In this document: one piece after another, positions 5,968-61,520 of the stretch
How the letters are laid out: each line of letters opens with the position of its first letter
How positions within the stretch are numbered: the first letter of the stretch is position 1
Assembly: GCA_030704615.1 (NCBI GenBank)
Contig: CM060731.1
Location: forward strand, 26,660,001-26,724,000
DNA: 64,000 bases
Direction of reading: 5' to 3'
Source of the DNA: Takakia lepidozioides
Lineage: Eukaryota > Plantae > Bryophyta
The notes under the pieces: model-generated
What the model saw: only the letters and a program-made list of their open reading frames with translations
What the model was told of the DNA's origin: nothing
The model's database searches: none
Position numbers and translations under genes: made by a program

Positions 5968-6615
5968 CGCATTGGTGTGGACGACGAAAACGTGAAGATT
6001 TCCATATTCGATGGTGGTATGATTGAAGGGCAGGACATTGTGGTGAACATCACTAGGGGCGGTACAACGGCTGCAATCGACTTTACATGGAGGAGCCCCA
6101 GGACTCATGAGCTAGTTCTGAGAGCAGTCGAAGTCCCATTGACAACGTGACTTGTATTCAGTAGGCACAGGGCTCAAGATTTGAGGGCACAATCAGCACA
6201 GTAGACGTGCTTCAAATGCAATTCATGTGGATCAATAAAAACCTCATTGTGCCCTCTTTTTATTCTATTCTGTGTCCATTGTTCCGAGAATGCGTCATTG
6301 CTCATTTCGTTTGGGATTGGGAGTGTGGGTGAATTTTGCAAATGGCTGGTAGGCTGAAACGGGCCCCCATTGTACAGAGCAGTACCACCCTACCATTCGC
6401 GAAACATTGCCTTTCAATATATAATTCTAAATAACATTGCCGAACCTCCTTCATCGGGAGGTCCTTCTCCCCCTATGACCGTGGCACCCTAAACCCTATT
6501 CCCGCGGACACTCATTTCCGGAAAATAGTGCTGCTCATGTTTTTTTCCACACTTACGACTCTGCTCATGGCTCATGCCGCTCATGGCTCATGGCTCATGA
6601 AATAGCAGCCCCCCC
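5968..6615. mobile_element. Terminus of a DNA transposon-like element inserted into a gag-like ORF
   Basis: ORF tail ends at 6150, then AATAAA, (ctcatgg)n subterminal repeats and a tagcagccccccc end followed by TTA. It truncates the gag-like ORF. Related G-run/gctagt/gtgagc termini occur at ~29813 and ~31004. Confidence 0.4.
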
Positions 6616-10200: not shown

Positions 10201-12790
10201 TGTGCCGGCAAATCAAGGACATTGGCCTCGTCGGAAATCTCTTGGAAGGTAAAATGTTGTGGGCAACTTTCGTGTTTCAGCTCAATTTCTTTTGCCAACT
10301 TTTTTATAAGTTCACATTTGCATAAACATGTGTTGCAGGGCGAGTTGATCTGGGAGACAAGCAAGTGCAGGCTGCTTTCGACTCTTTTGCCAGAGGTGCA
10401 AGGGACCTTGTCCTGGCTTTACAAGGAGTTCGGGAGACTGTCCAGCAGACTGGCCACAAGAATGTCGAACAACATATTCCCCACGACACATGTGGGCAGA
10501 CTGCCCAAGTGCTGGAGACCGAGCATGTGCACCAGACCGTCCCGGGTAATAGGCCAGATCACTCCCAGCAGACTGCCCCGCACACACATACTCAGTATGT
10601 GCAAACAGTACTGAGCGGGCAGCGAACTTTGCAGACTTTGTAGCAGACCAGAGAACAGACCGGCCAACAGACTGCCCCTCAGCCGACTGTGCAGCAGACC
10701 AGCGAACATGGCCACCAGACTGCCCCTCAGCAAACTGTACAGCAGACCGACGAATCCAGCCAGCAGATTGCCCCTCAGCAGACCGTGCAGCAGACCGACG
10801 AATCCAGCCAGCAGATTGCCCCTCAGCAGACTGTGCAGCACACTGGCGAACCCACTCAGCAGATGGCCGAGTAGACTATCCAGGAGACTAATAGCCAGTC
10901 TGTTCCCTGGATTGTGTAACAGACGCGGATGCACTGGCCTCACCGGGACCCTGTGGACGAATTTCTGCTGAGTTCCCAACAACATGTTTTTGGATCTGCC
11001 AGTATGAGTGTTTTGACCGAGTCCACTTTTCCCCCAGGCACATTCACTGACGACGTCATCAGGTCACCGGTAAAGCATTCTTATCCAGCTCCCCGTGGCC
11101 TGCCTTCTATGACCTTCCAGGTTAGTCCCGTTTTCGTGCGCTCAGTGGCGAAAGCCATAGATGAGTCTTACTTGATGACCGAACTCAATCTGGGAACGCA
11201 AAACCGTATCATAGATCTTACAGAAGAGTCTGAGGAAGCAATTGCCGGTGGGTCTTCCATACATGTTCTTGATGTTTCCAAAGTCCATGGAGATCCGAAC
11301 ACCCAGCCGACTGTCCACCAGACTGACCAGCATACTGAACAGTGGACACACGGAAGGACTGCCGAGCAACCTATGGCGGGGTAGCATACTGTCTTCATTG
11401 ATGAGCAGACTGAATCGCAGACTAACCAGCAGACTGCACAGGTCACAGATGGAAGGACTGACCAGGATGGCTCGGAGCGGCAGACTGCATAGCTCAGCTT
11501 TGACTGCACAGTTCAGATTGCACGACCTGACCAGCACACTGCACACTTCACATAGGGAAGGAGTGACGACCAACCTGCCACCGAGCACATTGCCCACATT
11601 GAGGAAGAGACTGAACCGCAGAGTTGCCAGCAGACTGCACAGTTCACAGATGAAAGGACTGACGAAGAACCGGCGGCCGAGTAGACTGCCCACATTGAGC
11701 AACAGACTGAACATGCTGGCAGGCACACTGACAAGGAACCACATGCGGCGCAAACACCGTCTGGTATAGCGCTGGATTACATGGAGTCTGCTCCCTCACC
11801 CCTTGGGCAGGTTGTGCCATTTCCTCTTTCAGCACTGTTGTTTATGTTTTAGCACATTGTGAAATTGGGCTAATTCGACATTTTGCTCGGTATCCTCACA
11901 GGATGTTCGTCCCTCCGTCGGCAGACTGTCTACTTCTGAGGACATGTGTCACGGCCCTTTGCCTTGAGGGCAGGGGGTCGGGACACATGAGGGGCTGCCC
12001 CTGTGGTGGGGGCAGCGACAACAATAGGTATGGGGGGCTGAAGCACCCTTGAGTGCCCAAGGCACTCAAGGAGGCGGAGGCGCTCACTAGGTGGAGCCCC
12101 GCACACCGGGTTGCGGTGGGGGTGGCTCCACAAGGGGTGGTGGTAGCTTAGCGGGACTTAGTGGGGGTGGCATAGGACTCACCATGGGGGCGGAGACCTC
12201 GTGGAAGGAGTCGTGGGGAGTCTTGGGACTCATCACGGTCCGCATGCCCGTATGCGCGGTCCATCGTGCCTCCATCCAGCACATTCTGTAAATGATGAAT
12301 GACCAAGACCCCGATGTCACACCGTTCTGAGAAGCCACTACGCGCGCTCACAATATACGAAGGCCTTGCCGTGTCAGGATTTCCATTCCCACGTCCCACC
12401 ATGTCCGACGCAGCACTTGCATCCTTGTCTCTGCCAGGTGGAGGCAACACGTATTAAAATATCTATTCCCCCAAGGCCACATTTTGTTTACCTCTTTTTG
12501 TGAAAGCCACGTCAGCAAATGTGCTGCCGAGTCATGGGTGCAATGAATGCGCAGTGGTTCATGGAGTCGTTGAGTCGACTACATATTCACTTTAATGAAT
12601 AAATATCTTTATTCCATTAATTGAATTAGGAAAGAAAATTTGTAGTCGCATGTGCAGTAATTACAATCACTTGTAATTTTGGCTTTTTCAAATTTTATGT
12701 ATTTACGCAATTCGTAAAATAGCCCGGAATTCTGCTACGACTCCGGAGTCGTTGACCCCACTTCTGTCCGCCGTCTGAAATGCCCCCGTG
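7288..12790 (+). mobile_element. ~5.5-kb insertion with imperfect G-rich terminal inverted repeats, carrying a decayed multi-exon gene
   Basis: Left end ccgcgggggtttcacaac versus right end (reverse complement) ccacgggggcatttcagac. It splits the putative LTR. No clear TSD. Confidence 0.45.
7823..12456 (+). pseudogene. Unknown multi-exon protein with CxxC..H zinc-finger-like motif and Q/T/P-rich repeats, disrupted
   Basis: 331-aa first exon (FCPFCEEVIKDKIQLNRHC). ORFs at 9050, 9605 and 9980 share one frame separated by single stops. Plausible introns ~8774-9106, 10249-10338 and ~11764-11901. QQTP/QQTV repeats at 9310-9510 and 10440-11760. Confidence 0.6.
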
Positions 12791-12923
12791 GGCCCACATT
12801 GTCTGTTTCGACTCTCCAGTAGTCCTGTTTACTACCAAGTGGTTCCCGGAGTGGTCGCGGACATGTAGTCGAATCGGAAAAGACACGAATGCTTCTAGTG
12901 TTAGCTTACTGGAGCTCATTACA
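12791..12923 (-). mobile_element. Probable 5' part of the interrupted LTR
   Basis: Minus strand begins TGTAATGAGCTCC at 12923, a typical LTR start, co-oriented with the PBS at 6953-6964. Confidence 0.35.
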
Positions 12924-12979
12924 TATTGTCTTCCTCCAAGAGCATATATAAGCTCTACGCAAGCGAGATAACCATGACC

Positions 12980-13850
12980 CTCTCTTACTAGCTATGGCCA
13001 AATTCGGCGGCCCTATAGAAACATCATCCCAAGGAGCAAAGGGTGGTACTGCCATTCTCATCTCTCCGGCCTCCCTCAAACAATTTTTGGTTTAAAGACG
13101 AGGTTTGGGAACCAGGTCGGGTGCAATTTTGCACCCTCAAGCTCACTAGAGACCCAGAACCTATTGGATTCCATAATATCTACGCTCCCAACATTGCCCC
13201 TGAGTGCATGGACCTCTGGTCCTTGATTACCCGAAAAATGTGCAACGAACCATCCACCAACAAATGGATAATTGCAGGTGACTTCAATATCATGGAGAAT
13301 GAGGAAGGCATGAAACGTCATGGGTCACACCCGGCGCCTTAATCCCGAAGAGGAGTAGCTCTGGCACTCTCTCGTCCAGACTCATAGCTTAATGGAAACA
13401 GAACGACCCACTGGTGGAGTACCCAAGAGGGATCAACCCTTTCTTTACTTGAACAAACAATCAGGGCATTCATGACCTGTGTATGGCTCATTTAAACGAA
13501 ATCTACATTATCTCTATGTCCATCTCCAATGGTGCAAGCCTTTTGCAGCCTCATAAACCCATTGCTCAGGGGTTTGACCATGTTGTGATTGCCCCCACCC
13601 TTTCAATGCCAAAATGCTCAAAGGCGAGGTAGAGGCATCTATAGGCCGCTTAACACTAGTCATCTCAAGATCCTAGCATTCATTCTTGGGCTGGAAACAG
13701 CATGGTTGGAGTCAAGGAACCACCTGACTCGCCCAATCAGATATTCATGTCCAAACTCTCGGCCACATACAGGACCTAAGCAAAGTGATTACGGCCTCTG
13801 ATCATAAAAGGCAAATCCTGGCCGTAGGTCGTCCAGGAACAAAAAATGCA
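12980..13850 (+). mobile_element. LINE (L1/Tx1-like) apurinic endonuclease fragment
   Basis: Motifs NIYAPN and WIIAGDFN in ORF 13043-13342, with degraded continuation. Confidence 0.75.
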
Positions 13851-13929
13851 AATGCAAGCAGGAATTTTTTCCTGAGGAGGAAAAAATGACAAATTACTTC
13901 TTCCAAAAGATGAAGTTGAGGCAATCCCT

Positions 13930-16900
13930 CTAAAGCATTTCAAAAATATATCCTCCACACATTCTACGCAGAAATACAAGTATGTATTGTGGTCTTAGAG
14001 GAACATCCACTGCCAAGTTGACGTTCATTAAAAAGAATGGGAGGATGCAATGAATTAAACAATGATCAGAGCTCCGGTATCCAAAATGACATACACAAAC
14101 AAACATGGAACAATGGCAGAACCAAACATGAAACAATGATAGCATGTGATGAAGAGGACAACATGGAAAAACGAGTCTGCCGGGACCTGATTGATGATAT
14201 GAAACATTCATATTTTATTTGAGATTGTATCATTCAAGGCGATGGACCAACAGAAAAATGAACGTCAACTGTCCATCCATTCATGGGCTTAATTCCATAA
14301 AAGCCATAGATTCTGAAGCCATAGAACCGAACGGCTTATACTAACTCATTAATAATACTGAGCCTCCTCCCAAATGGCTCACAGTCAAAGCATGTGTTTG
14401 AAGACGCCTCCTACCACAGTTACTTACAACGGTCTCCGCACTAGAGGAAACGGAGATACTTTCAGGAAGGTGAAACCCGCTGACATTGTCATCTGAAATG
14501 TTACTGCCAACTCTACTTGATGCCCTTGAAGCCTCCCGGCACGCCCGCCATTCTTCCCAATCACGCAGCTCTTGTTCCTCTTTTAGAATTCATTCCTTGA
14601 ATGTAACTGGGGACACGTGGTTGAAATAACAAATGTTAGGCCCAAAGTGGAAGTTTTGCATAATGAGGATTTGTTGAGGTAAGAGTGCAAATGCAAATGC
14701 AAAAAAATTGGAAAATCAAATTCTGAACAAACAACAGAACGGTGGGATTCACATGCCTACCGAGGTAATCAGGTTCTTTTTGATGTGGGATTCAAATACG
14801 AGGATCAAGATATCTTTCATACCAGGCCCAGCAGGCATGGTCTCGACCAATAGGCTTACGAGAACACTTTGCCCGGTTCTCGCTAATGTAATCAACGACT
14901 GTTGAAGCTTCAGCCATCTCCGATATCTATGGCCACACTGCCTTTGTCATATCATCCCGGTCACGCAAGCCGTTTGGTGATGGCTTGAATGAGAAAAAGA
15001 AGAATCCAGTATTTTATGGGTTTCGCAGGCCCTTTGATGGCTCATCATCTACAAGAAGTATTTGCCCCTTCGTAGCAAACGGTCTACCAGGGTACTTGGC
15101 AATAACACTACGAATATCCTTCACGAGATATTTCATCCCGGGCCATAACCGGTGGTATCCTTGCAATCCTCAGCAGACCATATGAAGCAAAACTTCTTTG
15201 CTATTTTCATGGGGAAGAAGCTCTCTAACATCCTACAAAGAACACCTCTATCAGCACATGACCAAATGGCCACGTGAAAAATGCTTCAATGTAAGGTCCA
15301 GAAACTCCAAGACTCCAGGCCGAGGCACCACAAACGGTCTGTCAGGAACTTGAAGTGTCACATTCCTGAAACAATCTCCATAAACAGTTCACCGCAGGGG
15401 TGGCCGGTAGCAGAGGAGTCCGTTGACACTCAAAATTAACAACATCTGTTTCCTCTTCCCCGTTGTTGCATGTAAAGGATGAGATACAAAATTATCCTGA
15501 GCAAGTTAATCACACACTGACATTAGTGTTTCTGCCATGAAAATACCCATGACCCATAATGATTGAGTGTATGGAAGATCAACACTATTGTGCAAAAAGT
15601 GGCAAAATTCTGTACGTGTTGTGGGCTTGGAATGTTTCGAGAAGAGGGATAATATTGTGAAGAAGAGGAACGTCGACTGCCAAGTGGAGGTTCAAAAAAG
15701 TACCTTGTATGGAGGGAAATTGATGAAGGTATCGTGCTGCATCCCCGTCTATTGAGAAAAGATGGAGTAAATTAGTGCAGAACCAAATGAACACAAAAGA
15801 GAAGAAAGTGGAGAAATGATATCGAATAATACCGATGTCGTCTTATTGGAAAGTCTCGCTGGCGTACTTGGGATCCCAACGGACGTGTTTTGACGAGACC
15901 CTGGTATGTCCGAGGTAATCTTTTTCTTCCGCGAGGCTGCTTTGTCTTGGAAGACAGACTTCTCTCTGGTGGAACTGATTTGTAAAAGAGATGGAAATGG
16001 TTTGGGGGCTCTATTCCGCTTCCTCGGTGCAGAACATTGTGCCAACATTGCAAGGTTGGGAAGCCGAAAAGTTGCAATTGTTTCGTCCTTGTCCTCGTCC
16101 AAAGGTTTGCGGGGAAGGGGAACGGAATGGAAATTGTCCCTTGAACACTCCATATCCTGAATGGAATTCACACGTAAGGTATGGATTACCTCGGAACAGA
16201 ATTCCAATGAAGATGTCGTTTGACAAGAAGGTCATAATCCGCATATTTTCTGGCCTGGAGTAAAACAGAACATCAGACCCAATACTAAGTAAAACAAAAG
16301 GACGAGTAAGAATTCAGATATAAGTAATTTTATCTGACTCCTTCTGATTTGGGCTACCCAACCCTTGTACTGAGGAGAGAAGGAGGGAAGAGAAGCAACA
16401 GTGTACTGCGGAGTCACAGCCTCAGCCGCGTCATCAATGGCTGACATTCTCGAGGTAGATTTCAGACCCTTGATACTTAACAGGGAGGGTGAGGATTGTA
16501 GAGTGAGGTCCACGAAATCCCCTTCACATTTGTCAGGTTGGCTTCCATCTTCGACATTAAATCCTAAACAATCATGCGACGGAACATCCATTTCAAGAAT
16601 GGACTGAAGAAGAGGGTCGTGCAATTGAACGGAAGCCAAGTGCCTGGATGATGCTTCACCGTCGATGACAGAAATCTGAACAGTAGTGTGAATGTTGTCC
16701 CTCTGTCGACGAATTTCTGATATGGAGGATTCCAATGGAGGTCCCAACGAGAAGTTTGCATCGTCAGCATCTCCATGAACCTGCCCAAACAAACTTATAT
16801 GGTCAATGTACAGACAAAGCATAACTTCCACTACACAGTGGAGGTTGTCGGATTTGAAAAAGCCCCCGCGACGAGATTTCGAGAAGGCTTGTATCCCATA

Positions 16901-40300: not shown

Positions 40301-42129
40301 GAACAGGGGTGTATAAAATGTGATATTAACCATGGTGAGAAAACTTGTCACAAATATGGTTGTTTCTGCATACCAAAACCATCACCTACAGTTAAACTGA
40401 CTCCCTAAAACATAGACACATGACCAAAGTCGCTAAGGAGTATGAGGTCTCAGAAAAAATCAGACTAGTTCAAGATGTGCAACTGTCTAGTTTCCAGACA
40501 GATGTGCTAACATCAGACATTGTTTCCAGCCAGTACTCACATTCAAAGCAAGAAACAATATGCACAGGAATTGAGCATTCTGTGGCTTTTCAACAATTGT
40601 CTAGCTTCCAAATGAGGGATAGTACCACACCTCTTTAGCCTCCTTGTATTCTGCCACAACCTTGCGGCTTGAGAGGCTGAACTTGACATCAGGGCCAAGC
40701 TCTGGCACGATGTAATGGCTGCAGCAACATGCATCCAGTTGATGCTTCATCAGATATTACCCCAACATAGTCATAGAAGCCGGAAAGCTATTAGTCAGAA
40801 CAATTAATAAACCTCCCATATTAGAGGAGACAAATACATGTTAGGGGGGGAAAACGTCAACCATACTCTGAAGCTCATTAAGCAACAGGGCCACTCCTTT
40901 GATGTGCCCTGACAAGCCCATAGAACACCACATTTGGTTGATCTCTAAACCTACTGGACTCTACACTATACCAGCTAATCGAACATGAAAAAAGCAACTG
41001 CAATGCCAACCTCTTAGGACAAATATATCACAACGGAGAAACATAAGTCCTGGTGGCCCCACCCAGGGCTGTCCTACAGCATGACTTTTAGTACGTAGTA
41101 GTAATGACCCAAAAGAAACCAGTTATGAACCCCACCTTCAAGGAGTCCAAGAAACATCATGTGAGATACAATGAAGAACTTACTAATTCGTGTCAAACCA
41201 CTTGGTCATCTCCATGGCAGGTTGCTTCGCATTACCCCGAGCCATGGAGAAGTAGACATCAAAGTCTATCTCTCCTCCAGACCAGCCATAGCGAGGCGGC
41301 ACTGCTCCAACAAGGGCTGTTGTGTCTAACACCTGGTCCCAATTGTATCATACTCCATAAGGACTGATTCAGCGTATTGTGGCATTGCAAGGGCTATAAA
41401 ATGGTTCAAGATAACCAGGCAAATTTGATAACTTCTAAACTAGTCCCTATTGCTCTCTGGTTAGCAATGTTACATGACTATTATTCAACAGATGTGAAAG
41501 AGAAAACTGAAGTTCCCATGATCCAAGGTGCTGCAGACCTTCAACTATGTAGCCTACTCTCTGTACAAGACATACTTGCACAACTTCAGAAGACATGAAT
41601 CCGCATGAACCCTGCCATAAGCTGTACTTGCTATTTTACACAATTACAAGCTAAGCTTTTTGCTTCAGCAATATGAGAAATCAAACAACGATTCCCATTT
41701 TAATTCTTCAAAGAATTACTGAATTCTATTAGATCCCACAGTAGTAGCACTCTATAATGAGACCAGACAAAAGGTCATGCAATGCCTTCCTTAACAATCA
41801 TTTAAAAAACTCACATCAAGATGAATCAGATGTATACGGCTCAGTGGTATGAGCCTTAGTCCAATCAGAAAAGATCGGCAAGAACCTCTTGAATGCCCCC
41901 CAAATGTGAGCATGAACACAGTACTGACCTGATCATAATAGGAGAAGGTGTTGCTCGGGATCAATGTCACACCCGTCTCTGCCATTTGCTTCCAGATTGC
42001 AGATCTCAACCCTGCTGCTGTCTTCTTCAGATCCTCAGCAGTGCTTTTTCCGTCCCAAAATGATTCAAGTGCAAACTTGAGCTCCCTCTTGGGGCCCATG
42101 CGAGGGTACCCAACCACGTGTGAAGTCAT
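34378..42129 (-). CDS. METE: Cobalamin-independent methionine synthase (5-methyltetrahydropteroyltriglutamate-homocysteine methyltransferase), 15 coding exons
   Basis: Exons ~42129-41929, 41332-41184, 40718-40631, 40246-40119, 39867-39674, 39136-38934, 38682-38519, 38047-37966, 37577-37410, 36728-36623, 36326-36076, 35820-35748, 35495-35367, 35189-34968 and 34524-34378. Motifs [61 protein letters not shown]. Confidence 0.97.
37133..37345. repeat. ~106-bp tandem duplication inside a METE intron
   Basis: gttggaaactgtcaatg...cattcaattgtgtcatt occurs twice in tandem. Confidence 0.85.
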
Positions 42130-43250
42130 GATTTGTGAATGTTTGATACTGTTCAATAACATAAATAGAGTTCCAGTCATGCACTTCTTCAGATGGTTCA
42201 GACTTGCAATTGATAGATCTTGCTGAGTTAAAGACACAATCCCATGAGGAAGACAGAAAGAGGGACCATTGTAGCTGCACAGCGTTAGTGACAATCTCAT
42301 TGTATTTTCCTTCTAAGTTTCAGCTAGATTGGTATTGTTAGTGAGCTCAAGTTGGAAAAGCGATGAAACAAACGTCAGGAAATATTTTACACCTCCCCTA
42401 CTACTAGTATGTAAAGCATCCTCATTAAATAATGAAGGACATATCTGTCTCTATACCTTTCCAAAATAAAAATATCTTAAACAATTTTCATAGCATTATT
42501 CTGCCCCTCAATTCAAGATCCCTTGCAGAGAGCTCCATTTCCTGGTGAGTGCCTGCATGTAGTGCTTATAGTGCAGTGAAGAATACTAAGCAAATAACCC
42601 CCACTTCCTAACCGCGTAGCTGCTCAGTAAATCAATGAAGCAGTGACATATACGTTCCCAATGCATGAAAAGTGGCAGCAATCCAAGTCTCTGACCAAAA
42701 ATCATTGGATTTCAGCCGAGAGGATCCGATAATTGAGCGGTATCATCCACAGAAACTCCAACCTGTAGGTGGTCACACTTTTCGGCAGTGCGTTTCCAAG
42801 TCCGCATCCATATTCCACACAAAAGGAATACATGCTCAATAGCAAACTACAAAATCCGAGGAACATGTAAGAGGAGACTCAGCAGCATGGGTGGAGGCTC
42901 CCATGTCTGTTTCCTCACTGCTAATTTAGAAGAGGGCAGCATGTGATTGTAATGCTCACCCACGCGCACTTCCAGTACTCTTATGATGACTAGGGAAACA
43001 TCTTATGTATGACATTATGGAGCAGAGATACTCTTCATCTGAAAAACATTTACCTTCAGCCACTTCTTTCTGTGACAGAGAAGGCAATGGTCTCGACGCT
43101 CTTCAGCACTTACAAAATCACGAACTCACATTACTTGGAGAACCAGGTGACAACAAACACAAAACCTCAACACATCAAAGGAGGAAAATTAACCTGTAAT
43201 GACAAAAGAAATAAAGAAAGGGTCAGCATTCAAATGGAAGGACACGCTCA

Positions 43251-45441: not shown

Positions 45442-48400
45442 TTATTGGGCAAGCTCTATCCGGATGGATTGAATGATGATGGCTGTATCATCCCTATCCT
45501 TACTTTTGGGCACAAGACTGACCAAAACGCTGGGCTCCGTCTCAAGGCCAAGCTGCTTCAGCTTTGAGCTGATGCCCATCCTGAAGGAAAGATCCCGGCT
45601 AGGAGTGCGTTCTGGCGAATTTCCTTGAACAGTCGGATAGGGATAGAAAGCGCCTGTATATTCTGTACAACTCAAGGGTGTATGCTCATCCGCCTCGGGC
45701 AAATTCAAAAACAAGACAAACCCTGATTGTTTACCTGATGGTATCCTTATGCCTTCAATGGCAAGGACCTCTTCTTGAAATCCTGGTTCCTCTGATTGCA
45801 ACCATAAAGCTTCAGGCTCCGTGGTTTGAATGATAATAGGAACTGGCCTTGAGATGTGAGCCTGGAAAACTGCACTAGTAAGAGTAATGTTTCTATTTTG
45901 CGAAGCTTCTGGTCTTCGTGTGGCAATTGAATCACAATCCTTGGTTGATCGCTCTGTCTGCCATGAAGGGACGATGAACCTTGCAAGCTTGGCTATGCCC
46001 CTCATGAGTCCCTCCAGAAACTCTGGAGCACAATCTGAAGACACTGAAATTGGAGCTGGCTTGGTGCTCAGAGAGGTAGAATTAAACGAGAGCCAGTCAT
46101 TCTCTACCTCTTCATGCTTGTAGCGCAATTTTTCCATATCAAGACAGTCTGCTACCTGTACAAATCAGCAAGAGTCTTCGCTGTTACTTGACCCATTCCA
46201 AATTTGGACCAAAGTTGATGCACGTACTACTAACCATTCTAGAAAAGGAAGGTGGAAAACCAACCTTTACTCGAACAAGATCAGCGTTTTCATCGTAGAA
46301 GACAAACTCCGCATTGAGCCAGTCGGGGTCAGTCAGGTCGCCCCGTTGACCTCCTGGCAGGTTCTTCCAGAGATCCCACAAACGGTCCACATTGGCATGA
46401 TGTGCAAAGAAAAGGGGATCTCTTGCTGAAGAAAAGGCCAAGGCCATGTCCTCACTCTGTAGCTCCCTCTCATCTCCTGCCCCCACATGTCCACAGAAAT
46501 CAAATAAATTGCCACAGCTCTCGTTTACAACCGCTCGCACCATATCCTCTTATAGTGACTACTGTCGCTACACAAATGAAAGCCCCCATGAACTAGAAAG
46601 AGGTTACTTCCAAAATCTAGGATCTCGAAACAAATTGGATGGGCGCTTAATTCCAAGGCTTAAAAACAACAATTCTCCTGTGGACATTCATTGCATTTGA
46701 GGCCAAAGACTCGCCTCACAAAAGCAGACGATTCCAAAGTACAAGCTGCAGAAACTAAGTCTTGCCTTGTATATCTCACAACTCAACGCACATTCGGCGT
46801 ACAGCTGCTTGCTGATGAACTCTTTTAGACACAAAGAAACGATTGTTTGCAAGAACTGTTTGGTAAAGAACCTGTCCATCGGATCTCGAAACAAATTGGA
46901 TGGGCGCTTAATTCCAAGGCTTAAAAACAACAATTCTCCTGTAGACATTCATTGAATTTGAGGCCAAAGACTCACACCTCACAAAAGCAGACGATTCCAC
47001 AGTACAAGCTGCAGAAACAAAGTCTTGCCTTGTATATCTCACAACTCAACGCACATTCAGCGTACAGCTGCTTGCTGATGAACTTTTTTAGAGACAAAGA
47101 AACAATTGTTTGCAAGAACTGTTCGGTAAAGAACCTGTCCAAAAGTGGACGCTGCCGTGCGGGTGAATCTCGAAGGCGGCAGCGCCATAGAAAGCTGGGT
47201 CGTTGCTGCGGTAAGGTTTCCCCAGAAACAGGAGCGGGGTGGGAGCGCCGCTCACTACGGCGGTGTACATCACGTTTCTATTGATCGCCCGCTGCTCCTC
47301 CGGGCTGGCGACTGCGGCCGCCGGGTCGTAGCGGCCCCAAAAGGTGAGGTCGATAATGGCGGGGGGCAGGTGGGCCGGGCTGCGTCTTTCGTCGAACAGC
47401 CCGGGGTTTCGGCGGTCTTGGTACACCGAGGGGAACACGTTGGAGGGCGGGTCGACGTCGGCTTGGTTGTCCCATTGCCAGAAGGGCAGCACGAAGGTGT
47501 CGTCGCCCAGCAGCTTGGCGAGTATGCGCTCGTGGAAATACAGGAACCAGCGATGGAAGGGCATCAGCAGCCAGTTCTTGTGCACATCGTACACCTCCGT
47601 GGAGTTCACTTGCCTGCGACAACAAGGAGTCGGATCCAGTGTTAGATAATGTACAGCTACAATCCCAACGATGGAATGAAGACAACATGTTGAAACTAGT
47701 AAGCTGCTTCATCTGTATAAGATTCCACTGTGAAGTAGCTAAATATGTTACTAGCTACTAGATTGTGCAACCTCGAGAACATTGCCATTAAACCTTCTAG
47801 GCCAAGGCCTCGATGTTAAATTAGAATCTGTTAGATCTTTCATTTTCATTCCTCATTGCTAATGTGCGTGCATACAGCTGAGTGCATAAGAAGTGTCTCT
47901 CCTCTCGCTCCAGGACAGGAGAATGAAGAGTATTCCACAAACTATGTGATGGGGAACCGACAAAGGTGAAAACTACGGAAAGTTTCGAGCTGAGCTTCAT
48001 GCAGGATATAAAATTGTCCGCACCCTGTACATTTCGGAAGTAGTTTGAAGGTATATCACAAGAACGGCGTGGTGGTGTTGAAGTAACATGCGAATGGGTG
48101 TCAGTGATCAAGTGAGAAAGCACGTGAGTAGACAAGTTCTCCTAGGCGGAGATCAGACGTGATACGAAGAAGGAAAGCCCATGAGGGGCGAATGTGTTTC
48201 TAGATGCATTTGAGTCCATTGATTCATACTCTGAACGAAACAGCCAAATATTGTCAAATGACCTTTCAGAAGATAAAACTAGAATGCCAGGCTCAGGATA
48301 GGAAAAAGACATAGAGATAGTTTCGACTTCCACATCCCTTCCCACATGATGACTTTGTACTGCCATTATACAAGATAAACCTGTTCAGGGGATTGCGCCA

Positions 48401-52329: not shown

Positions 52330-54695
52330 TAGAATAAATTCCCGCAACAAGAGAAGGTCCAGAGCTAGTTTAGCGTAGAGCAGGAATAGGGTGCCATAGT
52401 TCCACGTCATCATCACCACGTCATCGTAGACACGTCGTCATGCCACGTCATCATCGTCATCCTGCCCAAAATGCCCGAAAATAACCGGAAGAGGTGTACG
52501 ATGTGCTCAGCGCGGAGGGGGTTTCACACACGGATCTCACAAGGAGATCCTACATGGTGGATGCTGCACAACCTTTTTTCATTATTTCAAAATGGGGACT
52601 GGCTGCAGTATGAGGCATAAGAATGCAGGAGGTTTGAAGAACATTTTTAATGTCTCAGGTGTACTTCAGCTGGCAACTACATCCCATAGAAGCATTTTCT
52701 ATGGCATCTTTTATGGAGGGGGCATTCACCCCCGCTTTGAGATGACCCAGGCTGGTTTCTCGCAAATGAGCATCGAATTGGAGGGCGAATCTCTAGAAAC
52801 ATAGAAGGAGTACACGCAGAGAGGTCAAAAAATTGACTAAGGATTGCAACGTTATGGTGCAACTACAGTATCCTCGCCGGAAATCTCTAACTTTTCTTCC
52901 TTATCTGGTGTTTCATTTTCGCTGTTCTCGGTATCTTAATTCAGCCCTGGGACTGCAGCCACAAGGTTGACATTTGCAAATCATAGGAGCTGTCGACAAG
53001 AGCCTGCATGAGCACCAAGGGTCCATCACACCCAACAGGGATGGGTTAAGGGTTACATCTCCCACATAAAGAATGAGCAATGGCAAGCAATGGGCATTTG
53101 GAATGTGCTCGAGCTTTGCTGCTCAGTTTTACACACCTGTCATGACAAACAAAAAACTGCTGACTTTTCAGCTTGCCATGCTTTCACTTTCTTTATTCTA
53201 GCATTTAGGAAGGGTCGAAGTAGTACAGTACATCTGTCGCTGATTGATTGAATTTGGCAGTATGAGGGGTGATGGATATACGAACTTTGCTACAAAGGTC
53301 ATCTGCGCCAATTCCACCTGCATGAAAAGAAGGTAAGGTTGTCTCACTTCTCCATAAAGATCTTCATGTAGTCTGTTGTTCAATGTAAGAAGTTTTCTTG
53401 CGGTAATTTTATGCAAGGATTGTGTCGGTTGGCAAATCACTGGGTCACCCATGTGAAAAGTTGGTTCATTTTTTTCCCCTTAAGGGTGGTGATTTTGAGT
53501 ACATACGAGGTACTTGTTGAGTAATACCAATTAGGATGATTTCCCAGCTGTTGCTGACCCCCTTCGAAATACTTTAAAATCCCTATAGGCTGCAGCTGAG
53601 TTCTATCAAGCTAAATACTTTTCATCTACCACTGATATTTCCTTTTGTCTCAGCTGAAGAGGTTTTTCCATTTCACCATTGATACACCCTATAGCATGTT
53701 GTTGCCATCTGCTCATTAGACAATGTCAACCACCAGTAATGGGTCTGTGGTATTCTCTTCACCTTTGTCAATGCACTGCACGAATAACATATACCAAATA
53801 AACACTAGAATTTCTAGGCAAACTACCAACAACCTCTCACATTCTTAATACCAATTTGGAAGGAATTCTCACCTGAATCTGAAATTCAACTGAACTTCCT
53901 TTTGCAAAGGCATTCTTAGGTGAGTTTATGGGCCGGCTGCCAGGTCAGTTAGTCAGTTGGGCGTCGTTGGGGACCTCCCAGGCACAACATTTGGGGCCAG
54001 CTTTGAGGCAAGCCTCTCTTTGAGAGCAACCTAGTTTCTCCACTTGATGTGTTGTCAATCTCAACCAACCCAAGAGGGTTCAAAATACAAGCTTGTTCAA
54101 ATGAGATTCAAATTTAGGGCTAGCTTGCTAACTGGTCGCAGTTCATCCTCTCATATGATATTATTGGAGCACCTCTAACAGGGGTTTATCCAAAACCTAT
54201 CGACGTGGCCTTCTACCTTGCTCATAAACAAAAACTTGGCACTAGCTCGCATCCTAAAGAAGAGTAAGATGACTGTATCACATGTTTTGCATCTACGACA
54301 GGTTTACTATACAGCTCCAAGTTATATGCTGGCCAGCGCACATCTTGAACTTGACTTGGGAAGTACTTTAGTGCAGTGGATAAATTATTAACTTCATTCC
54401 GGGCATCTCTCCAATATCGACTGCCTGAATAAGTCCAAGTCCAAGTTGTGAGCAGTCGCTCCCAGGTTTCTTTTTAAAAATAAAAAATAAATAAAAATAA
54501 ATCCAAGTCCTTGAAAAGTTTCATAACCATTGGAGGCCTTGGTAACCTTGAACATTGGCTTTCTTTGCTTATATTCTAATATCTTGTGTCCCCTGGATAT
54601 TTGGAATGTCATGCCTGATTTAATTTGAAGTTAACAATATTGGTCCAATGTCGATCTTTGAAAGAGATAAAAGATAAAAGATAAAGTTTCTTTAA

Positions 54696-57600
54696 CCCCT
54701 AATGGACGAGGCGACCTGAATCAGGTCGCCGGAAAATTTCGATTGGATGAAAATCATCGAGATGAATTCGGATGAATTTGAGCCCTAAATGAAAAATGTA
54801 GGAAATTAAATTCTACGCCCCCATGTGTTGATGGCACCCCAAAAATCCTAAAGGACAGCCGGCAGGATTTTTTGGAAAGCGTGGGGGTACCCAAAAATCA
54901 GTGGTTTGGGGCCCTCCAGCAGGGTTGACCTGCCACGTGGCTGGCTGGATGGGGTGGGGTTCATGCGTTTGGCGGCGAGGAGTGCCACCGGGGGCTGCAT
55001 GTCCGCCCGTGCGGACAGCCCACTCCCCCCGGCACGCGCGCGGGGGTGGCGGGAGGTGGGGAGGATGGGCACTTCGCGTCCTTCGTTCTCTCTCGTTTGT
55101 GCATGTCGAGGGCTCGCAGCTTATTGTGTGCAGATCTTCCTCTTACGCTCCTTCTTCTTTCCTGTGTCGATCCTATTTAGCCCTGCATGCGCTTGATTGT
55201 TTTCTTTGTGCGCTTATTTGGGCTCTTTGCGATGTGGGTGTGTGCGGGCCGCTGTTCCGTTTTGCGCCGCGGAACTTTTGTTTGTCTTTAGAGCTGGCCG
55301 CTGCGTTTACATCTGCTGCTCCACCTACATTTACGAGGTGCGAGAAGGGTTGCGCATCCACGAATTCAGTGCGCAGCCGTCTGTTCGCCTTAGGTACAAG
55401 CTCGCCCCTTTTCCTCCTTTGTGCTTTTCTCTTTACACCTCTTGCTTATGCTTCATTCAGCTAGTGCTAGGGTTCTGCATGCCAACTGATTAGATCCTAC
55501 AGCCATGCTGTCAGGGATGGTAGTGCTTGGGTTTTGTGTTTCTTGATGTGGGCATTAGATTTGGGGATTTGTTTTTTTGTTCTGTACGTAGGCTTGTAGT
55601 GATTGGGGTGAGCTGTCTGGGTGGTAGGGAATCAATGGTGCCTAAGCGCAAGGCCCTTGCTGCACCTGAGCCACCACCTCCTCCACCCGAGCATGCAGCC
55701 GCAGCCCAGGTTATAAGAGGATGGGCGATGCAAGAACAGCATTGCATTGAGGAGTAGTGCAAAGTAATCTTGGGCTGCCTTTCTCCTGACTTCCTGTTAA
55801 GCTTGCTCCCCCGCCATGTGCCAATCGTTGGCCTCGCCACCCTCGCCCTCACAACTTCCGTTTCCTATTTAGACGTCAAGTTGCTCTTGTTCTAGGTTGG
55901 AGAGAGAGAAGAGAGGAGGGTGACAAGGACGGTTATAGTGAGGTTGTGAATTCTGTGTTGAGAGAAGATGTCTGGCCCGATGCCAACAGTCAGTCGTCTG
56001 AAGGTTTTGGCTCGTGCAAAGAGGTCTCTTCCTGCAAGTGTGACAGCACCTCCCAAGGGTGTCGTCAGGAAAAAAACTTGTCATGGAGTGAATTTTGGGA
56101 TTGGGGGAGAGGCTGGTGGTCTGCCGGTGAATGTGGGGCGTGTTGGTGGGTCTCTGAGTCCGGGGAGGATGGTGGCCATGGGTCGGGTGGCTTTGGGGGA
56201 GTTGCATCCCAATAGTGGGGGTGCTGGGGGTACTGTGAATTTTGGGGAGGGTCTTCTAATGGGAGTTTTGGGCATGATGAGGCCTTGTCGGACATGGACG
56301 AGGATTTTGAGGGTGACGATGGCTACATAGAGGACTCTGCCGATGAATGCGATTGGGAGAATGATGGGGTTGACATGGAGTGCGATGAGGAGCCAACCGC
56401 CGATTTTGTCAAGATGTTCAAGCCTGCGACTTGGGAGTCCAATGTTGGCTCTGAGTTTGCAACTGATAGAGGTGCTTTTACTGGCCCTGTACCTGGTCCC
56501 TGCCTGCCAGATATGAAGGGCTCACATCCTGTTTGGTTCTTTCGTTTGTTTTTGGAGACAACATGTGCTTGCACGGATATGTAGGGAGTCCAATCGTTAT
56601 GCATGTGAGGCTTTGGGTGCGGGCACTCGTGGGGGGCTTAAGTGGAAAGAGCTCACTGTTCGTGAGTTGAGGGCTTGGATTGGCATTTGTATCTTCATGG
56701 GCATGAAGAAGTTGCCCCAAACTCGCTTGTACTGGCAACACTCTGAGCAATTCTTCTCTTGTCCTGTCATCCGCAAAGTGATGACGAGAGATAGGTACGA
56801 GGCCATCCTCCGCTGTTTGCATCTTGTTGACAACGCCACTTTGGTGGCGGATCGGAAGAGTAGCAATTACGACAAGCTTGGAAAACTAAGGTGGGTGTGT
56901 GATGAGATTGTTGATAGGTGTAAAAGCCTCTGGAATCTGAACAAAATGGTGACCGTTGATGAGGTCATGATTCGTTACAAGGGGAGGTACTGTCCAATTA
57001 GGATGTATATATGCTAAGAAAAACCATGCAAGTGGGGCATAAAGGTGGGGCCAATGCTGACTCGGAGACTTCATATGTCTACAATTTCTGTTTTTACTTT
57101 GGTAAGAATGCAGGAGGGTCAGATGGCCAGAGGCAGAAAAGTGGGAAGGGAGAAGGTTACGATGTTGTTTGCCGGCTGACTGAAGGGCTGCATGGTTTGG
57201 GCCATGTCATTGTCACTGACAATTACTTTACCTCTGTCCAGCTTCTGTATGACTTGGCGAAGCTTGGCACTTGGGCCACTGACACAATCAGATTGAACCA
57301 AAAGTGTCTCCCTCCCTCTTTGCTGAAAATGAAGAAATCAAAGACTACCAAGCAAGGGCAGTCATGGTACAGGATGCATGATTCAAGGGAGGTGGCTGTT
57401 GTGTTATGGTGGGACAAGCAGGGGGGTTTTTTACTTTCATCTGCAGCCAGGCCAGCATGCAGCCTGTCCTCTCCTGTGACTGTACGTCGTTTTGTGGAAA
57501 ACCAAAGAGTACCCGTGCCATCCGTACCTGCTCATGTGCAATACCAAACGTATATGCGAGGAGTAGATGTGCAGGACCAGCTGAGGGGTGCGTATAGCTT

Positions 57601-59374
57601 GCAGCTGCGCACAAAGAAGTGGTGGCATCGTGGGGGTTTTTTTTTTTTTTTCTGGATACCACGGTGGTGAATGCGTATATATTGCATTCTGCAATGGAGA
57701 GAAGGATGGGGCGTCGGGTCATGACACATCTCGAATTCAATCTGGCTTTGGCATACGGATTGACAGCAGGCTGCTACACTGACATCATGGATACCACTGG
57801 GGATGTGGAATGCACGTTTGTGCATCAGTGCCTTCACACGACAAGACGACGATTGTGTATTGTGTGTCACGTTCGTACTCACTATTACTGCCCTGGCTGT
57901 GATGGCAGCCACTTGTGCCTTGGGCTGTGTTGGAATGAGGCACACCTACATGTCACGAGGTGACTGCAGCTAGACCTTTCAGTGATTACTTCTTCCTTGT
58001 GTGTGTGCATTGGTTGCGGATGGGGGTTCTGCTGTGTGGATTGCATTGCAGGTTGCTGGCGTTGGCTATGGATGGCGTGTGTGTGTGGGGCGTGGGGGGT
58101 GTGTTACTCGCTGATCTGTGGTGGCTGTAGGGTACTGGGGTGTGTTGTGTTGGTGTTGGTGAGGGCGCTGGGGGTCATGGGGGTGTGGCTGTTGGTTCAT
58201 GGCTTCTAGGGTCATGGGGGTGTGCTGCTGTTGGTTCATGGGCAATGCTCGTCATGTGGGGGTGTGTTGCTGATGGTTCACAGGCTGTGGGGGTCATGTT
58301 GATCTGCTGCTGCTGGTTGAGGGGCTGTGGAGGCGATGGGTGTCTGGGTGTATTGGCGTAGGAGCGTTGTGTTTGGGTGGTTTCACACTTTTGGGGAAGG
58401 GGACCGGGGGGGGGGGGGGGGCTGTCTGCACAATGGGCAGATCAGGGGGTTCAACCCCCCCCCCCAGTTCTAGGATCATGATATTCCTGGGGAGCTTGTA
58501 TTGCTGCATTGGGGTTAAAGCAGGTGCTCGCGGGGACCTTGTATCGCTGCATTGGGGGTAATGTAGGAGCTCGTGGGGACCTTGTATCGTTGCACTGGGG
58601 TAAAGCAGGTAGTTGGTAGTTGGTAGTTAGTTTTCAGATGCTTGTCGGGTGAAACGCTGAAACATTGGGTGGCCCCAGGCCCTTCTTAGGGTTTCGCATT
58701 TGGGGTCCCCCGACATTTTGTCGCAAATCGGTGACGTAGCCCATTTTTTGTAGCCGGAAATGTCTACCGGCTCAGGCAATATTTGGCCTGAGCTGGGATT
58801 GAAGTAGAAATTCACAGAAACAGAAATCAGTGCTTCAATTTTTGCTGAAATTCTGAAATTCTTTTTGGAGGTGGTACTTTATCATTCAAGGGAGACTTTC
58901 ACCACAACAATTGTGATTCCAAGGAAATTTGGCCCCCCTCAGCCTGAATTACATGTCATTTGAGCTTCATGGTGTGTTTTGACCCCCCTGTTTTCCCTTA
59001 CAAAGCAACCTTGCGAAAATTTGGGAATTTTGCTTTGGAATTTTGCCACGACATGCTTTAGGTACCACATAATGGGAATCTGGATGGGGTCTTGTGAGGA
59101 AATTTTTTTTGTCGATCCACTTTCCTGGACAAACCATTTTTCCATTGCAAATTTGGAGTGTACCCCAAATTTAGGGCTTGCAAATTTCTTATAATCTTCC
59201 AAAATACACGGTGAAATGAGGTGAAATTTTCACAGAAGCTGGATGAAGTAGGTAGCCTCCAATTCATACATTTCATCCCAGTGGATATTAGTTTCGTGAG
59301 AGATATACCCTCATCCGTGAGGGTATGTCCTGTTTTGGAGGGGGCCCACCAAAAACTGCCTCGTCCATTAGGGG
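54696..59374 (+). mobile_element. Full-length piggyBac transposon
   Basis: Perfect 17-bp TIRs CCCCTAATGGACGAGGC (54696-54712 and 59358-59374), TTAA on the left and TTAC on the right, enclosing a piggyBac transposase. Confidence 0.93.
55968..57963 (+). pseudogene. piggyBac transposase (DDE_Tnp_1_7-type, DDD triad, C-terminal Cys-rich domain), frameshifted as assembled
   Basis: MTRDRYEAILRCLHLVDN, TVDEVMIRYKGR (D at 56958), VTDNYFTS (D at 57218), YMRGVDVQDQLR (D at 57566), KKWWHR, CIVC...YYCPGC...LCLGLCWNEAH. Frameshifts near 56280, 56560, 57010-57050 and 57640. Confidence 0.9.
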
Positions 59375-60273
59375 TTACCGTCCAGTGGATTTACTGAGCC
59401 TACTGCTCAACACACGTTTGAGAGAGAGTTGTTGCTTTTATCCTTTTGGTGGGAACTGAAAGGTTTTGTAAGCAACTGAGATCGGATGCATACAATGGAG
59501 CGGGCACCTTCTTGTTTCCAATGAGGACGTCAGAGCGTCAGAGCAAGAGCTATTTCCTGCTGAGTTATCGTCAGTGCCAGCGCTAGCGATTTCCAAAACC
59601 CATATTGTTTCTAGTTAGCTCGCTCCACCGACATCCTATGCACCCGAGAGTGATGCACCTCTAGGCTCCAGCATGCCCTTCATTATGACAGGTGGGTCCG
59701 CCCGTCAATCCTACCCTACTTGTCACTGCCCAAGCAGATTGCACAACAATCCAAGTCTGGACAGGACCCCATTACAAGGGGCCGCCCCTCAATCTTATCC
59801 CCTACTTGCGACTTCCCAATTGCTCCAACGTGATTAATGTGAGATGGCACAGCAATCCAAATCTGAACTGGACCTCCTTTCATGGTGTTTGAATAAAATG
59901 TTGAGCAGTTATTTAACTTAATTCTCTCTATCACCCATCTGGTTATACCATATATATATGACCGTCGGAGCACGTAGTCACGTGTGTTGCATGTGGCTCA
60001 ATACCCGGGCCTCATTCAAGCCTGACGTGTAGCGTGAGGCCCCACGACAAACAACAAGGATTTCGGATTTTGATGGCTATTTGCTTGATAGGTGGCTCAT
60101 CACAAGAACAGATGGATGGCCTTAATCAATGCACCATAGCATTGGCTATGCCGGATGCCCGGCCTGCTCCCTGTGCCTTCCCCCAAGAGCCGGATGCCCT
60201 CTGATTATTCCATATATATTCTCACTTTTAACCCAAAACTCAAAGAGCTGTCATTTGGTGGATGAGGGTGTAT

Positions 60274-61520
60274 TAGGGAATTCCAAAAAGGCCTTGATGT
60301 GAAATGCATCGCAATTCACTTGATCACCCCCTAAAAGTGCGCAATTCAATTGAACTAACCCTAATTTGCAATTCAATTGACACACGATTTGAATGCGAAT
60401 TGGAATTGCTGACTACAATTCAATTGAATTGTCGGCACACGATTCAATTGAATTGCGAATTGGCAATTCAATTGAATTGTTGACTACAATTCAATTGAAT
60501 TGTAATCTATAATTTTTAACTTATTTATGTATATCATATATATGTATATTTAATTATACATATATACATACACATGTATAAACTAAAAATACATGTTGCC
60601 TGTCTATTCTTGCTATCCGTCTGTCAATCCTTTGCCCGTGGTAAGGCTTGAGCCCAAGATAAGCCTAAGGGAGAGCGAGAGAGGGAGAGAGAGAGAGGGG
60701 AAGTCACGAAGCGCTTGTAAAAGCGGGATTGTCTCTCTTTGTGGATGTTGGTGCCAATATATGGCTATGTACATATACCAAACATGATACCAATGTAAGA
60801 GTATCAACGTGTAAGAGTTTGATATATTAAACTATATAGAACACACATCCCAACTTGAACATGATACCTTTGTAAGGGTATCCAATTTTTTGATAATTCT
60901 CAAGATGAACATACTTTTTTTTTCTTTGTCCTGGGCCAGATACTAGTGTTAGGGGACTACATGGTGATGCAGGGGAAGCCTTTCATCAATTGTCAGGTTT
61001 GATTTTGTTTGTTTTTTTCGGAGCTAGCCATGTTTCTTTTGCCAGTGAATCACAGGAAGCTGCTGATCTGTCTCCGTCTTTGGCTCTCCCTTTCTCGCTG
61101 AGGCTGAGGGTGGTTTCACAACTCCACAATTTCCTCAAGGGCACAAGAAAGAGGGCCATCAAGAATAGACGGGCAACATGTATTTTTAGCTTATACTCTT
61201 ATATGTGTATAAATATAATTTGAATATATACATGTACATATATATTATATATTATATATTATATACAAAAATAAGTTAAAAATTATAGATTACAATTCAA
61301 TTCAATTGTAGTCAGCAATTCAATTGAATTGCGAGTTGACAATTCAATTGAATTGCCAATTCGCAATTCAATTGAATTGTGTGCCGACAATTCAATTGAA
61401 TTGCAAATTAGGGTTAGTTCAATTGAATTGCCCTTGCAATTCATTTGAATTGCGCACTTTTAGGGGGTGATCAAGTGAATTGCGATGCATTTCACATCAA
61501 GGCCTTTTTGGAATTCCCTA
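60274..61520. mobile_element. Foldback-type non-autonomous element with ~300-bp internally repetitive TIRs
   Basis: TAGGGAATTCCAAAAAGGCC...GGCCTTTTTGGAATTCCCTA termini, repeated 16-bp palindrome caattcaattgaattg, and a 7-bp TSD ggtgtat (60267-60273 and 61521-61527). Confidence 0.88.

What the first reader, a model, noticed from the sequence alone, without database searches (positions are those of the whole stretch)
54696..59374. Complete piggyBac transposon in a land-plant genome
Seen: 4679-bp element with perfect CCC-initiated 17-bp TIRs, a TTAA left target, intact DDD triad and Cys-rich tail, on the same contig as plant METE and PPO genes. Known: piggyBac is typical of animals, fungi and protists and is rarely reported as a native element in land plants. 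Inference: a plant-resident lineage, either retained ancestrally in bryophytes or horizontally acquired, and recent enough to keep perfect TIRs. It is a potential footprint-free tool for plants.
Basis: partly seen in the sequence, partly recalled or inferred. Interest (0 to 1): 0.8.

Follow-up and report, generated by a model that had tools for sequence, protein, structure and literature searches.

The report
Decayed piggyBac transposon in a moss-type plant
This is a real piggyBac-type jumping gene sitting in a plant chromosome, but this copy's transposase gene is broken in four places, and piggyBacs in land plants were already reported in 2025, so it is a useful but fairly ordinary record.

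Summary
The element at 54696-59374 is real. It has perfect 17-nt inverted ends that start CCCC, a TTAA on the left and TTAC on the right. Its plus-strand transposase matches Pfam DDE_Tnp_1_7. The three catalytic aspartates and a six-Cys/one-His tail are present.

It is not "complete". The reading frame has three frameshifts (about 56549, 57047 and the T15 run at 57637-57651) and one in-frame TAA (57015-57017).

Short-read contigs from the same organism cover both junctions without a difference. They also show a multicopy family at 90-100% identity. Sister copies are in frame at three of the four lesions. An internally deleted derivative exists. Other copies of the repeat that hosts the insertion read straight through a single TTAA.

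Plant PPO and MetE exons lie on the same window.

The transposase belongs to a well-supported clade of unnamed metagenome piggyBacs. One clade member sits beside a plant-type gene, and another has TTAA/CCC ends. The clade is separate from animal PGBD4-like proteins, and nothing is more than 47% identical to this element.

[quoted passage not shown] This scan already holds 155 piggyBac notes on this genome.

Verdict: new member of a known kind, and this copy is dead.

The parts
54692..54695 (.). Left target-site copy, TTAA
   Evidence: Read directly
54696..54712 (+). Left 17-nt terminal inverted repeat, starts CCCC
   Evidence: perfect match to the right end; 0.07 matches expected by chance
54709..54729 (.). 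10+10 nt palindrome abutting the left TIR; possible transposase-binding site (inference only)
   Evidence: Read directly
56285..57963 (+). piggyBac transposase pseudogene, about 555 codons read through four breaks. Pieces: 56285-56548 (frame 2), 56556-57014 (frame 0), 57018-57047 (frame 0), 57050-57636 (frame 2), 57652-57960 (frame 1), stop 57961-57963
   Evidence: Pfam PF13843 E 9.7e-30 and 1.2e-25
56549..56553 (+). Lesion 1: one extra T in a T run (frameshift). Sister copies lack one base here and read in frame
   Evidence: table 4 (56549, 1 left out, in the only contig laid there in each of the two DNA runs)
57009..57024 (+). Lesion 2: small scrambled stretch of several indels that creates an in-frame TAA at 57015-57017 inside the conserved MP-KP-KWGIK motif
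   Evidence: table 7 (loose end after 57010 in sister copies reads in frame)
57047..57048 (+). Lesion 3: one base missing (frameshift). Sister copies carry a T here, which restores the conserved Trp
   Evidence: table 4 (57047, T put in)
57637..57651 (+). Lesion 4: T15 homopolymer in place of the Leu-Phe-Phe-Phe codons, shifting the frame
57856..57945 (+). C-terminal Cys-rich domain, C-x2-C-x8-C-x2-C-x6-C-x3-C-x4-H
   Evidence: No Pfam model matched
58147..58340 (+). G/T-rich tandem array, period about 42 nt, downstream of the gene
58400..58472 (+). Strong hairpin built on a G16 run and a C11 run
   Evidence: -50.2 kcal/mol, z -3.3, 0 of 200 shuffles as good
58489..58617 (+). Three tandem 43-nt units
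   Evidence: Single units fold no better than shuffles
59302..59329 (.). Right subterminal palindrome, different in sequence from the left one
   Evidence: I23
59358..59374 (-). Right 17-nt terminal inverted repeat
59375..59378 (.). Right target-site copy, TTAC (one substitution relative to TTAA)
   Evidence: In other copies of the family the letter after GGGG-TTA is A (table 7, loose ends after 59377)
59375..59415 (.). Right part of an unrelated high-copy short repeat into which the element inserted. Its left part covers at least the last 20-30 nt before 54696
   Evidence: summed depth 9,575-15,675 here and 1,815 at 54676, against 32-64 in unique flank contigs. Joints 54694/5/6 -> 59380/1 run across a single TTAA

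Best explanation
This is a decayed, formerly autonomous copy of a multicopy piggyBac-superfamily DNA transposon that lives in the genome of a bryophyte-type land plant. Members of this superfamily move by cut-and-paste. A DDD transposase binds the CCC...GGG inverted ends, excises the element through hairpin intermediates, and inserts it at a TTAA, which is duplicated. Here the element inserted into a TTAA inside another short, high-copy repeat. Afterwards this copy picked up one substitution in the right TTAA and four lesions in its transposase gene, so it can no longer make transposase. Because both 17-nt ends are still perfect, it could in principle still be moved by a working transposase from a sister copy. 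Shown: the anatomy, the lesions, the multicopy family, the in-frame sister sequences at three lesions, and the clade placement. Inferred: the mechanism (from knowledge of the family), the possibility of mobilisation in trans, and the existence of an intact sister copy.
For: Ends and target. Transposase identity: Pfam PF13843; hits to the solved piggyBat and T. ni transposases with the catalytic motifs aligned; full-length alignment with relatives showing DDD, the extra D and the Cys/His tail. Lesions. Residence in the plant genome: contigs with 0 differences cover 54446-54720 and 59348-59900 at unique depth 32-64 (table 8), and PPO and MetE exons are on the window. Multicopy family: 681 and 1,017 contig pieces at 90-100% identity in two DNA runs, and 41 pieces in an independent 'plant metagenome' run. 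Sister sequences are in frame at 56549, 57010-57024 and 57047 (tables 4 and 7). A deletion derivative joins 55368 to 58222 (table 5). Paralogous empty sites join the two flanks over one TTAA (tables 5 and 5c). Lineage: SH-aLRT 100 clade with metagenome piggyBacs, including one with TTAA plus a 17-nt CCC TIR (L004) and one beside a plant-type ADH gene.
Against: The window's own versions of the lesions are not seen in the short-read contigs, because contigs drop rare variants. Lesions 1 and 4 lie in homopolymers, so they could be assembly errors. Junction contigs reach only 25 and 27 nt into the element, under the tool's 31-nt rule of thumb. The empty-site joints have a shorter side of 20-30 nt, the range the tool warns about. 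No intact copy of this family was seen. No transcript of this copy was seen. Host identity is coded, so 'bryophyte' rests on plant domains and on unchecked notes from the scan.
Confidence: 0.85

Rival explanations
1. The copy is actually intact and autonomous, and the breaks are assembly (homopolymer) errors or unusual decoding.
For: Lesion 1 sits in a T5 run and lesion 4 in a T15 run, which are typical places for long-read errors. The short-read contigs never show the window's own version at these places.
Against: Lesion 2 is a multi-indel scramble with a TAA stop in a conserved motif, and lesion 3 is a missing T that is not in a T run. Neither looks like a homopolymer error. The listed sister contigs also differ from this copy by about 1-3% in substitutions (table 8), as expected for an ageing copy.
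Confidence: 0.07
2. The family is a recent horizontal arrival from an animal, fungus or virus rather than a long-term plant lineage.
For: piggyBacs are known for patchy distribution and frequent horizontal transfer (PMC13461360). The element's G+C (0.51) is above its flanks (0.42-0.44).
Against: Nothing in 1.84 billion representative proteins is more than 47% identical. Named animal proteins are at 32-37% and fall outside the element's clade. One clade member lies beside a plant-type gene. No relative was found in the viral contig collection. Copies within the genome have diverged by up to 10%.
Confidence: 0.06
3. Contaminant DNA or a chimeric assembly.
For: None beyond the unusual host.
Against: Exact junction contigs at unique depth, a family present in hundreds of contig pieces from the same organism's runs, and plant genes on the same window.
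Confidence: 0.01
4. A domesticated piggyBac-derived host gene (PGBD-like).
For: The catalytic residues are conserved.
Against: The TIRs and target duplication are kept, the family is multicopy, and the reading frame is broken.
Confidence: 0.01

Closest known systems
piggyBac superfamily (T. ni piggyBac; piggyBat from Myotis lucifugus, PDB 9c0f; T. ni PDB 6x67)
   Same: TTAA target; CCC...GGG terminal inverted repeats of similar length (13 nt in T. ni per PMC5381638, 17 nt here); PF13843 core; DDD plus the extra D in GVDxxDQ; a C-terminal Cys-rich domain; a single-gene element with long untranslated flanks.
   Different: Named animal piggyBac-derived proteins are only about 32-37% identical over the 219-aa piece. 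The Cys-rich tail matches no Pfam model, including none for piggyBac tails. The subterminal palindromes differ between the two ends. The host is a land plant. This copy's gene is broken.
Unnamed metagenome piggyBac clade (P0005, P0013, P0028, P0174, P0193, P0195, P0199, P0212, P0215; loci L001-L006)
   Same: Same strongly supported clade (SH-aLRT 100). Same Cys/His spacing in the tail. L004 has TTAA plus a perfect 17-nt CCC-type TIR. At least one member lies next to a plant-type gene.
   Different: At most 39% identical over the whole alignment (up to 47% over the 219-aa piece, to a fragment outside the tree). Those relatives carry conserved N-terminal extensions of 250-650 aa that this element lacks. 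Several of them are intact, and the L004 element is much larger (9.2 kb).
'Group 4' piggyBacs of fungi, land plants and algae (PMC13461360, 2025)
   Same: A piggyBac lineage in land plants, described there as an unexpected distribution.
   Different: Membership could not be tested. The paper's sequences and supplementary files are not held here.

Membership tests
piggyBac superfamily transposon | TTAA target-site duplication | tested here: met
   Left TTAA, right TTAC (3 of 4). Other copies read A after GGGG-TTA, and paralogous empty sites carry one TTAA (tables 5, 5c, 7).
piggyBac superfamily transposon | Terminal inverted repeats beginning CCC and ending GGG | tested here: met
   17/17 perfect, starting CCCC.
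piggyBac superfamily transposon | Transposase with the DDE_Tnp_1_7 (PF13843) core | tested here: met
   E 9.7e-30 (profile 14-140) and 1.2e-25 (profile 150-336).
piggyBac superfamily transposon | DDD catalytic triad | tested here: met
   Asp codons at 56958, 57218 and 57566 align to the conserved DE, DNY and GVD motifs of piggyBat and of relatives.
piggyBac superfamily transposon | C-terminal cysteine-rich domain | tested here: met
   The six Cys and one His are conserved in position across the clade and in animal PGBD4-likes. No Pfam model matched, so this rests on the pattern and the alignment.
Autonomous (complete) element | Uninterrupted transposase reading frame | tested here: not met
   Three frameshifts and one TAA.
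Active transposon | Excision/insertion activity or insertion polymorphism | not testable with these tools
   Only indirect signs: a multicopy family, copies at 99% or more, and a deletion derivative.
Group 4 piggyBac (PMC13461360) | Placement in that paper's tree and CRD class | not testable with these tools
   No supplementary data are held.
Two-gene piggyBac with upstream helper ORF (earlier notes of this scan) | Conserved small ORF in front of and overlapping the transposase start | tested here: not met
   No Pfam hit in any upstream ORF. Upstream ORFs and N-terminal parts of relatives find nothing upstream of the transposase start at 56285.
piggyBac with tRNA-like 52-nt modules (earlier notes of this scan) | Anticodon-less tRNA-like units behind the transposase | tested here: not met
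   ARAGORN found 0 and Rfam found 0. The 43-nt units fold no better than shuffles.

The most novel reading that the evidence does not exclude
The family to which this dead copy belongs still has intact, active members in this bryophyte. It would represent an old streptophyte-resident piggyBac lineage (a clade of its own, with relatives beside plant genes). That would give a plant-native, TTAA-specific, potentially footprint-free transposon system.
Probability: 0.3. Interest if true: 0.55.

Novelty: new member of a known kind. Interest (0 to 1): 0.3.

Why it matters
piggyBac is a workhorse for seamless transgenesis, and for a long time it was thought to be missing from plants. A documented, junction-verified family in a bryophyte genome fills in the distribution that a 2025 mining study only sketched. 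This family has sister copies that read in frame where this copy is broken, and it sits in its own clade with plant-hosted relatives. It also points to where a plant-adapted transposase might be found. This particular copy is only a fossil marker of that family.

Tried and rejected
- The word-index protein search with the 219-aa piece returned only three unnamed fragments, because of the length window.
- Searching JGI metagenome contigs for TTAA plus the TIR, and for the protein piece, found nothing.
- Searching viral contigs with a clade profile found nothing. A first attempt failed because fragments made the alignment too gappy.
- I looked for TTAA-flanked TIRs in L001-L003, L005 and L006 and found none. 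Those contigs may not reach the element ends.
- I looked for an upstream helper gene and for tRNA-like modules reported by other agents for other piggyBac families of this genome. Neither is detectable here.
- I first read the right flank as a TA-flanked MITE inserted into the TTAA. I dropped this when the depth at 54676 and the joints showed that the same repeat continues on the left side of the insertion.
- The supplementary tables of the 2025 paper are not held.
- Searches for papers on piggyBac in named bryophyte genera found no description.
- Host species naming was not pursued, because run labels are coded.
- I built no repaired or consensus ORF. Breaks were read with X in my scripts. 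No spliced model was needed.
Full report
**What is there**

The window carries a 4,679-bp element at 54696-59374.
- Its ends are a perfect 17-nt inverted repeat starting CCCC. The tool reports 20 nt because the TAA of both flanks also matches.
- With three mismatches allowed, the 17-mer occurs only at these two places in 64 kb, against 0.07 expected by chance.
- The left flank is TTAA (54692-54695) and the right flank is TTAC (59375-59378).
- The ends are otherwise asymmetric. A 10+10 nt palindrome abuts the left TIR (54709-54729), and a different palindrome lies 45 nt inside the right end (59302-59329).

**The gene**

The plus strand between 56285 and 57963 encodes a piggyBac transposase.
- Two pieces match Pfam DDE_Tnp_1_7 at E 9.7e-30 and 1.2e-25, covering profile positions 14-140 and 150-336.
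- The same pieces hit the solved piggyBat (9c0f) and T. ni (6x67) transposases. The DE, DNY and GVDxxDQ motifs align.
- In a full alignment with relatives, the three catalytic Asp (codons at 56958, 57218, 57566), the extra Asp (57575) and a C-x2-C-x8-C-x2-C-x6-C-x3-C-x4-H tail (57856-57945) are all in place.
- The tail matches no Pfam model.

**The gene is broken**

No ORF in the element is longer than 219 aa. Reading the three frames side by side and the raw sequence gives four lesions:
1. One extra T in a T run at 56549-56553.
2. A small multi-indel scramble at 57009-57024 that puts a TAA (57015-57017) inside the conserved MP-KP-KWGIK motif.
3. One missing base at 57047/57048.
4. A T15 run (57637-57651) where relatives have Leu-Phe-Phe-Phe codons.

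So "complete" and "intact" in the finding are wrong for the gene, although the catalytic residues themselves are present.

**Support from reads**

I laid Logan contigs from four public runs on 54200-59900, which is 5,701 letters and within the operators' limit. Two runs are DNA from the same sample of the coded "organism A". One is an independent "plant metagenome". One is a run of organism A guessed to be RNA.
- *Junctions.* Contigs with no differences and unique-level depth (32-64) cover 54446-54720 and 59348-59900. They cross both junctions by 25 and 27 nt. That is what k-mer contigs do at the edge of a repeat, but it is slightly under the tool's 31-nt rule.
- *Copy number.* Inside the element, 681 and 1,017 contig pieces were laid at 90-100% identity. 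Summed depth there is tens of times the unique level, and highest in the last 200 bp. The tool warns that summed depth is not a copy number, so I read this only as "many diverged copies".
- *Independent sample.* The metagenome run holds 41 pieces at 90-99% identity, so the family occurs in a second, independent sample.
- *Divergence.* The sister contigs listed in the tool's table (the longest laid, some at a joint) differ from this copy by about 1-3%.
- *Sister copies at the lesions.* They lack the extra base at 56549, carry the missing T at 57047, and read in frame through 57010-57024. Each time this restores residues conserved in relatives: Trp, Trp and Pro. The family consensus is therefore open at three of the four lesions. 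The fourth could not be judged.
- *Deletion derivative.* A form joining 55368 to 58222 exists at single-copy depth in the DNA runs. It also appears in the run guessed to be RNA.

**Insertion site**

The 41 nt right of the element (59375-59415) and at least the last 20-30 nt left of it belong to another, very abundant short repeat. Summed depth is 9,575-15,675 on the right and 1,815 at 54676.
- Several contigs join 54694-54696 directly to 59380-59381 with zero to two letters between. They read through a single TTAA followed by the right flank (tables 5 and 5c).
- I read these as uninterrupted paralogues of the host repeat, that is, empty sites. They fit a piggyBac insertion with TTAA duplication followed by one substitution in one TSD copy.
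- Other copies of the piggyBac family have A after GGGG-TTA (table 7).
- The shorter sides of these joints are short (20-30 nt), so this is good but not decisive evidence.

**Host**

A plant-type polyphenol oxidase C-terminal domain (45442-46134, minus strand) and a cobalamin-independent methionine synthase exon (41791-42297, minus strand) lie on the window. Earlier notes of this scan call the genome moss-like. I did not verify the species, because run labels are coded.

**Relatives**

The word-index search is limited by length and gave three unnamed fragments.
- Because the claim rests on rarity, I ran the exhaustive search with the 219-aa piece. It gave 3,955 hits at E of 0.001 or better, with the best at 47% identity.
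- The ten closest clusters I looked up are unnamed metagenome or Logan proteins.
- The named proteins further down the list are animal PGBD4-like, at 32-37% identity.
- In a maximum-likelihood tree of 38 proteins, the element falls in a clade of ten with SH-aLRT 100. The clade is separated by a long branch from the rest of the tree, which holds all four named animal sequences.
- Within that clade, L004 is a 9.2-kb element with TTAA on both sides and a perfect 17-nt CCC-type TIR.
- P0212 sits in three samples beside the same zinc-ADH gene. The best named matches of that gene are all land plants, at about 75% identity over the exon.
- P0013 is an intact 1,164-aa ORF seen on 16 contigs.
- These relatives share N-terminal extensions of 250-650 aa that this element lacks.
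- No member of this element's own family was found in JGI metagenome contigs. No relative was found in viral contigs.

**Leads from other agents**

This scan already holds 155 notes on piggyBac in this genome. They include an intact two-gene element, helper ORFs and tRNA-like modules. I tested both extras here.
- No upstream ORF has a Pfam hit. Upstream ORFs and N-terminal parts of relatives find nothing upstream of the transposase start at 56285.
- ARAGORN and Rfam find nothing.
- The 3' region does hold a 42-nt G/T-rich array, a strong G16/C11 hairpin (z -3.3) and three 43-nt units. The units fold no better than shuffles.

This looks like a different, single-gene family.

**Literature**

- Bouallegue et al. 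[quoted passage not shown]
- Elliott and Gregory 2015 list PiggyBac among the superfamilies found in all groups studied (PMC4438587).
- A fern genome table lists 1,230 PiggyBac fragments (PMC6890710). A liverwort genome table lists none (PMC12130436).
- A review counts PiggyBac among angiosperm MITE superfamilies (PMC10004981).
[quoted passage not shown] Its supplementary data are not held.
- I found no paper describing a bryophyte piggyBac.

**Mechanism and verdict**

By family knowledge, such elements are excised and reinserted at TTAA by a DDD transposase that recognises the CCC...GGG ends.
- This copy cannot supply that enzyme. It keeps perfect ends, so trans-mobilisation by an intact sister is conceivable but unshown.
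- Perfect 17-nt ends are weak evidence of youth. At about 2% divergence, roughly half of such pairs would still be perfect.

The finding is a correct identification with an overstated state ("complete", "intact") and a novelty claim that the 2025 paper and this scan's own earlier notes have overtaken. I rate it a new member of a known kind, of modest interest. The open question worth following is whether the family still has intact members.

Noticed in passing
window 54665-54695 and 59375-59415: The piggyBac sits inside a copy of a very abundant short repeat. Summed contig depth is about 45x the unique level on the left side (at 54676) and roughly 230-250x on the right. Other copies continue past 59415 with a stretch holding an inverted match to 59379-59389, so it may be a MITE. 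In this locus the repeat breaks off at 59415.
   Followed up: partly
window 55368 -> 58222: An internally deleted derivative of the family lacks the whole transposase (2,853 bp, 4-nt microhomology at the joint). It is present at single-copy depth in the DNA runs and in a run guessed to be RNA, so a non-autonomous copy may be transcribed.
   Followed up: partly
window 59166-59356: The last 200 bp before the right TIR have several-fold more summed depth than the rest of the element. This suggests many short derivatives that keep the right end.
   Followed up: no
window 58147-58617: The 3' untranslated part holds a 42-nt G/T-rich tandem array, a G16...C11 hairpin (z -3.3) and three 43-nt tandem units. 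No tRNA-like fold, Rfam match or ARAGORN hit was found.
   Followed up: partly
L001-L006 (proteins P0005, P0013, P0199, P0212, P0028): The closest clade of metagenome piggyBacs carries mutually homologous N-terminal extensions of 250-650 aa with no Pfam match. One of them (P0013, 1,164 aa) is identical on 16 contigs, which suggests a currently active element in some plant-like host.
   Followed up: partly
L004:635-9805: A 9.2-kb TTAA-flanked piggyBac with perfect 17-nt CCC-type TIRs and several extra ORFs around the transposase. The ORFs called there contain stops when translated with the standard code.
   Followed up: no
window 60516-61279: A TTAA-flanked pair of AT-rich 15-nt inverted ends (1 mismatch) about 750 bp apart. 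It is possibly a small MITE and possibly chance.
   Followed up: no
window 5001-6000: A 1-kb stretch with G+C of 0.25 in a window that averages 0.45.
   Followed up: no
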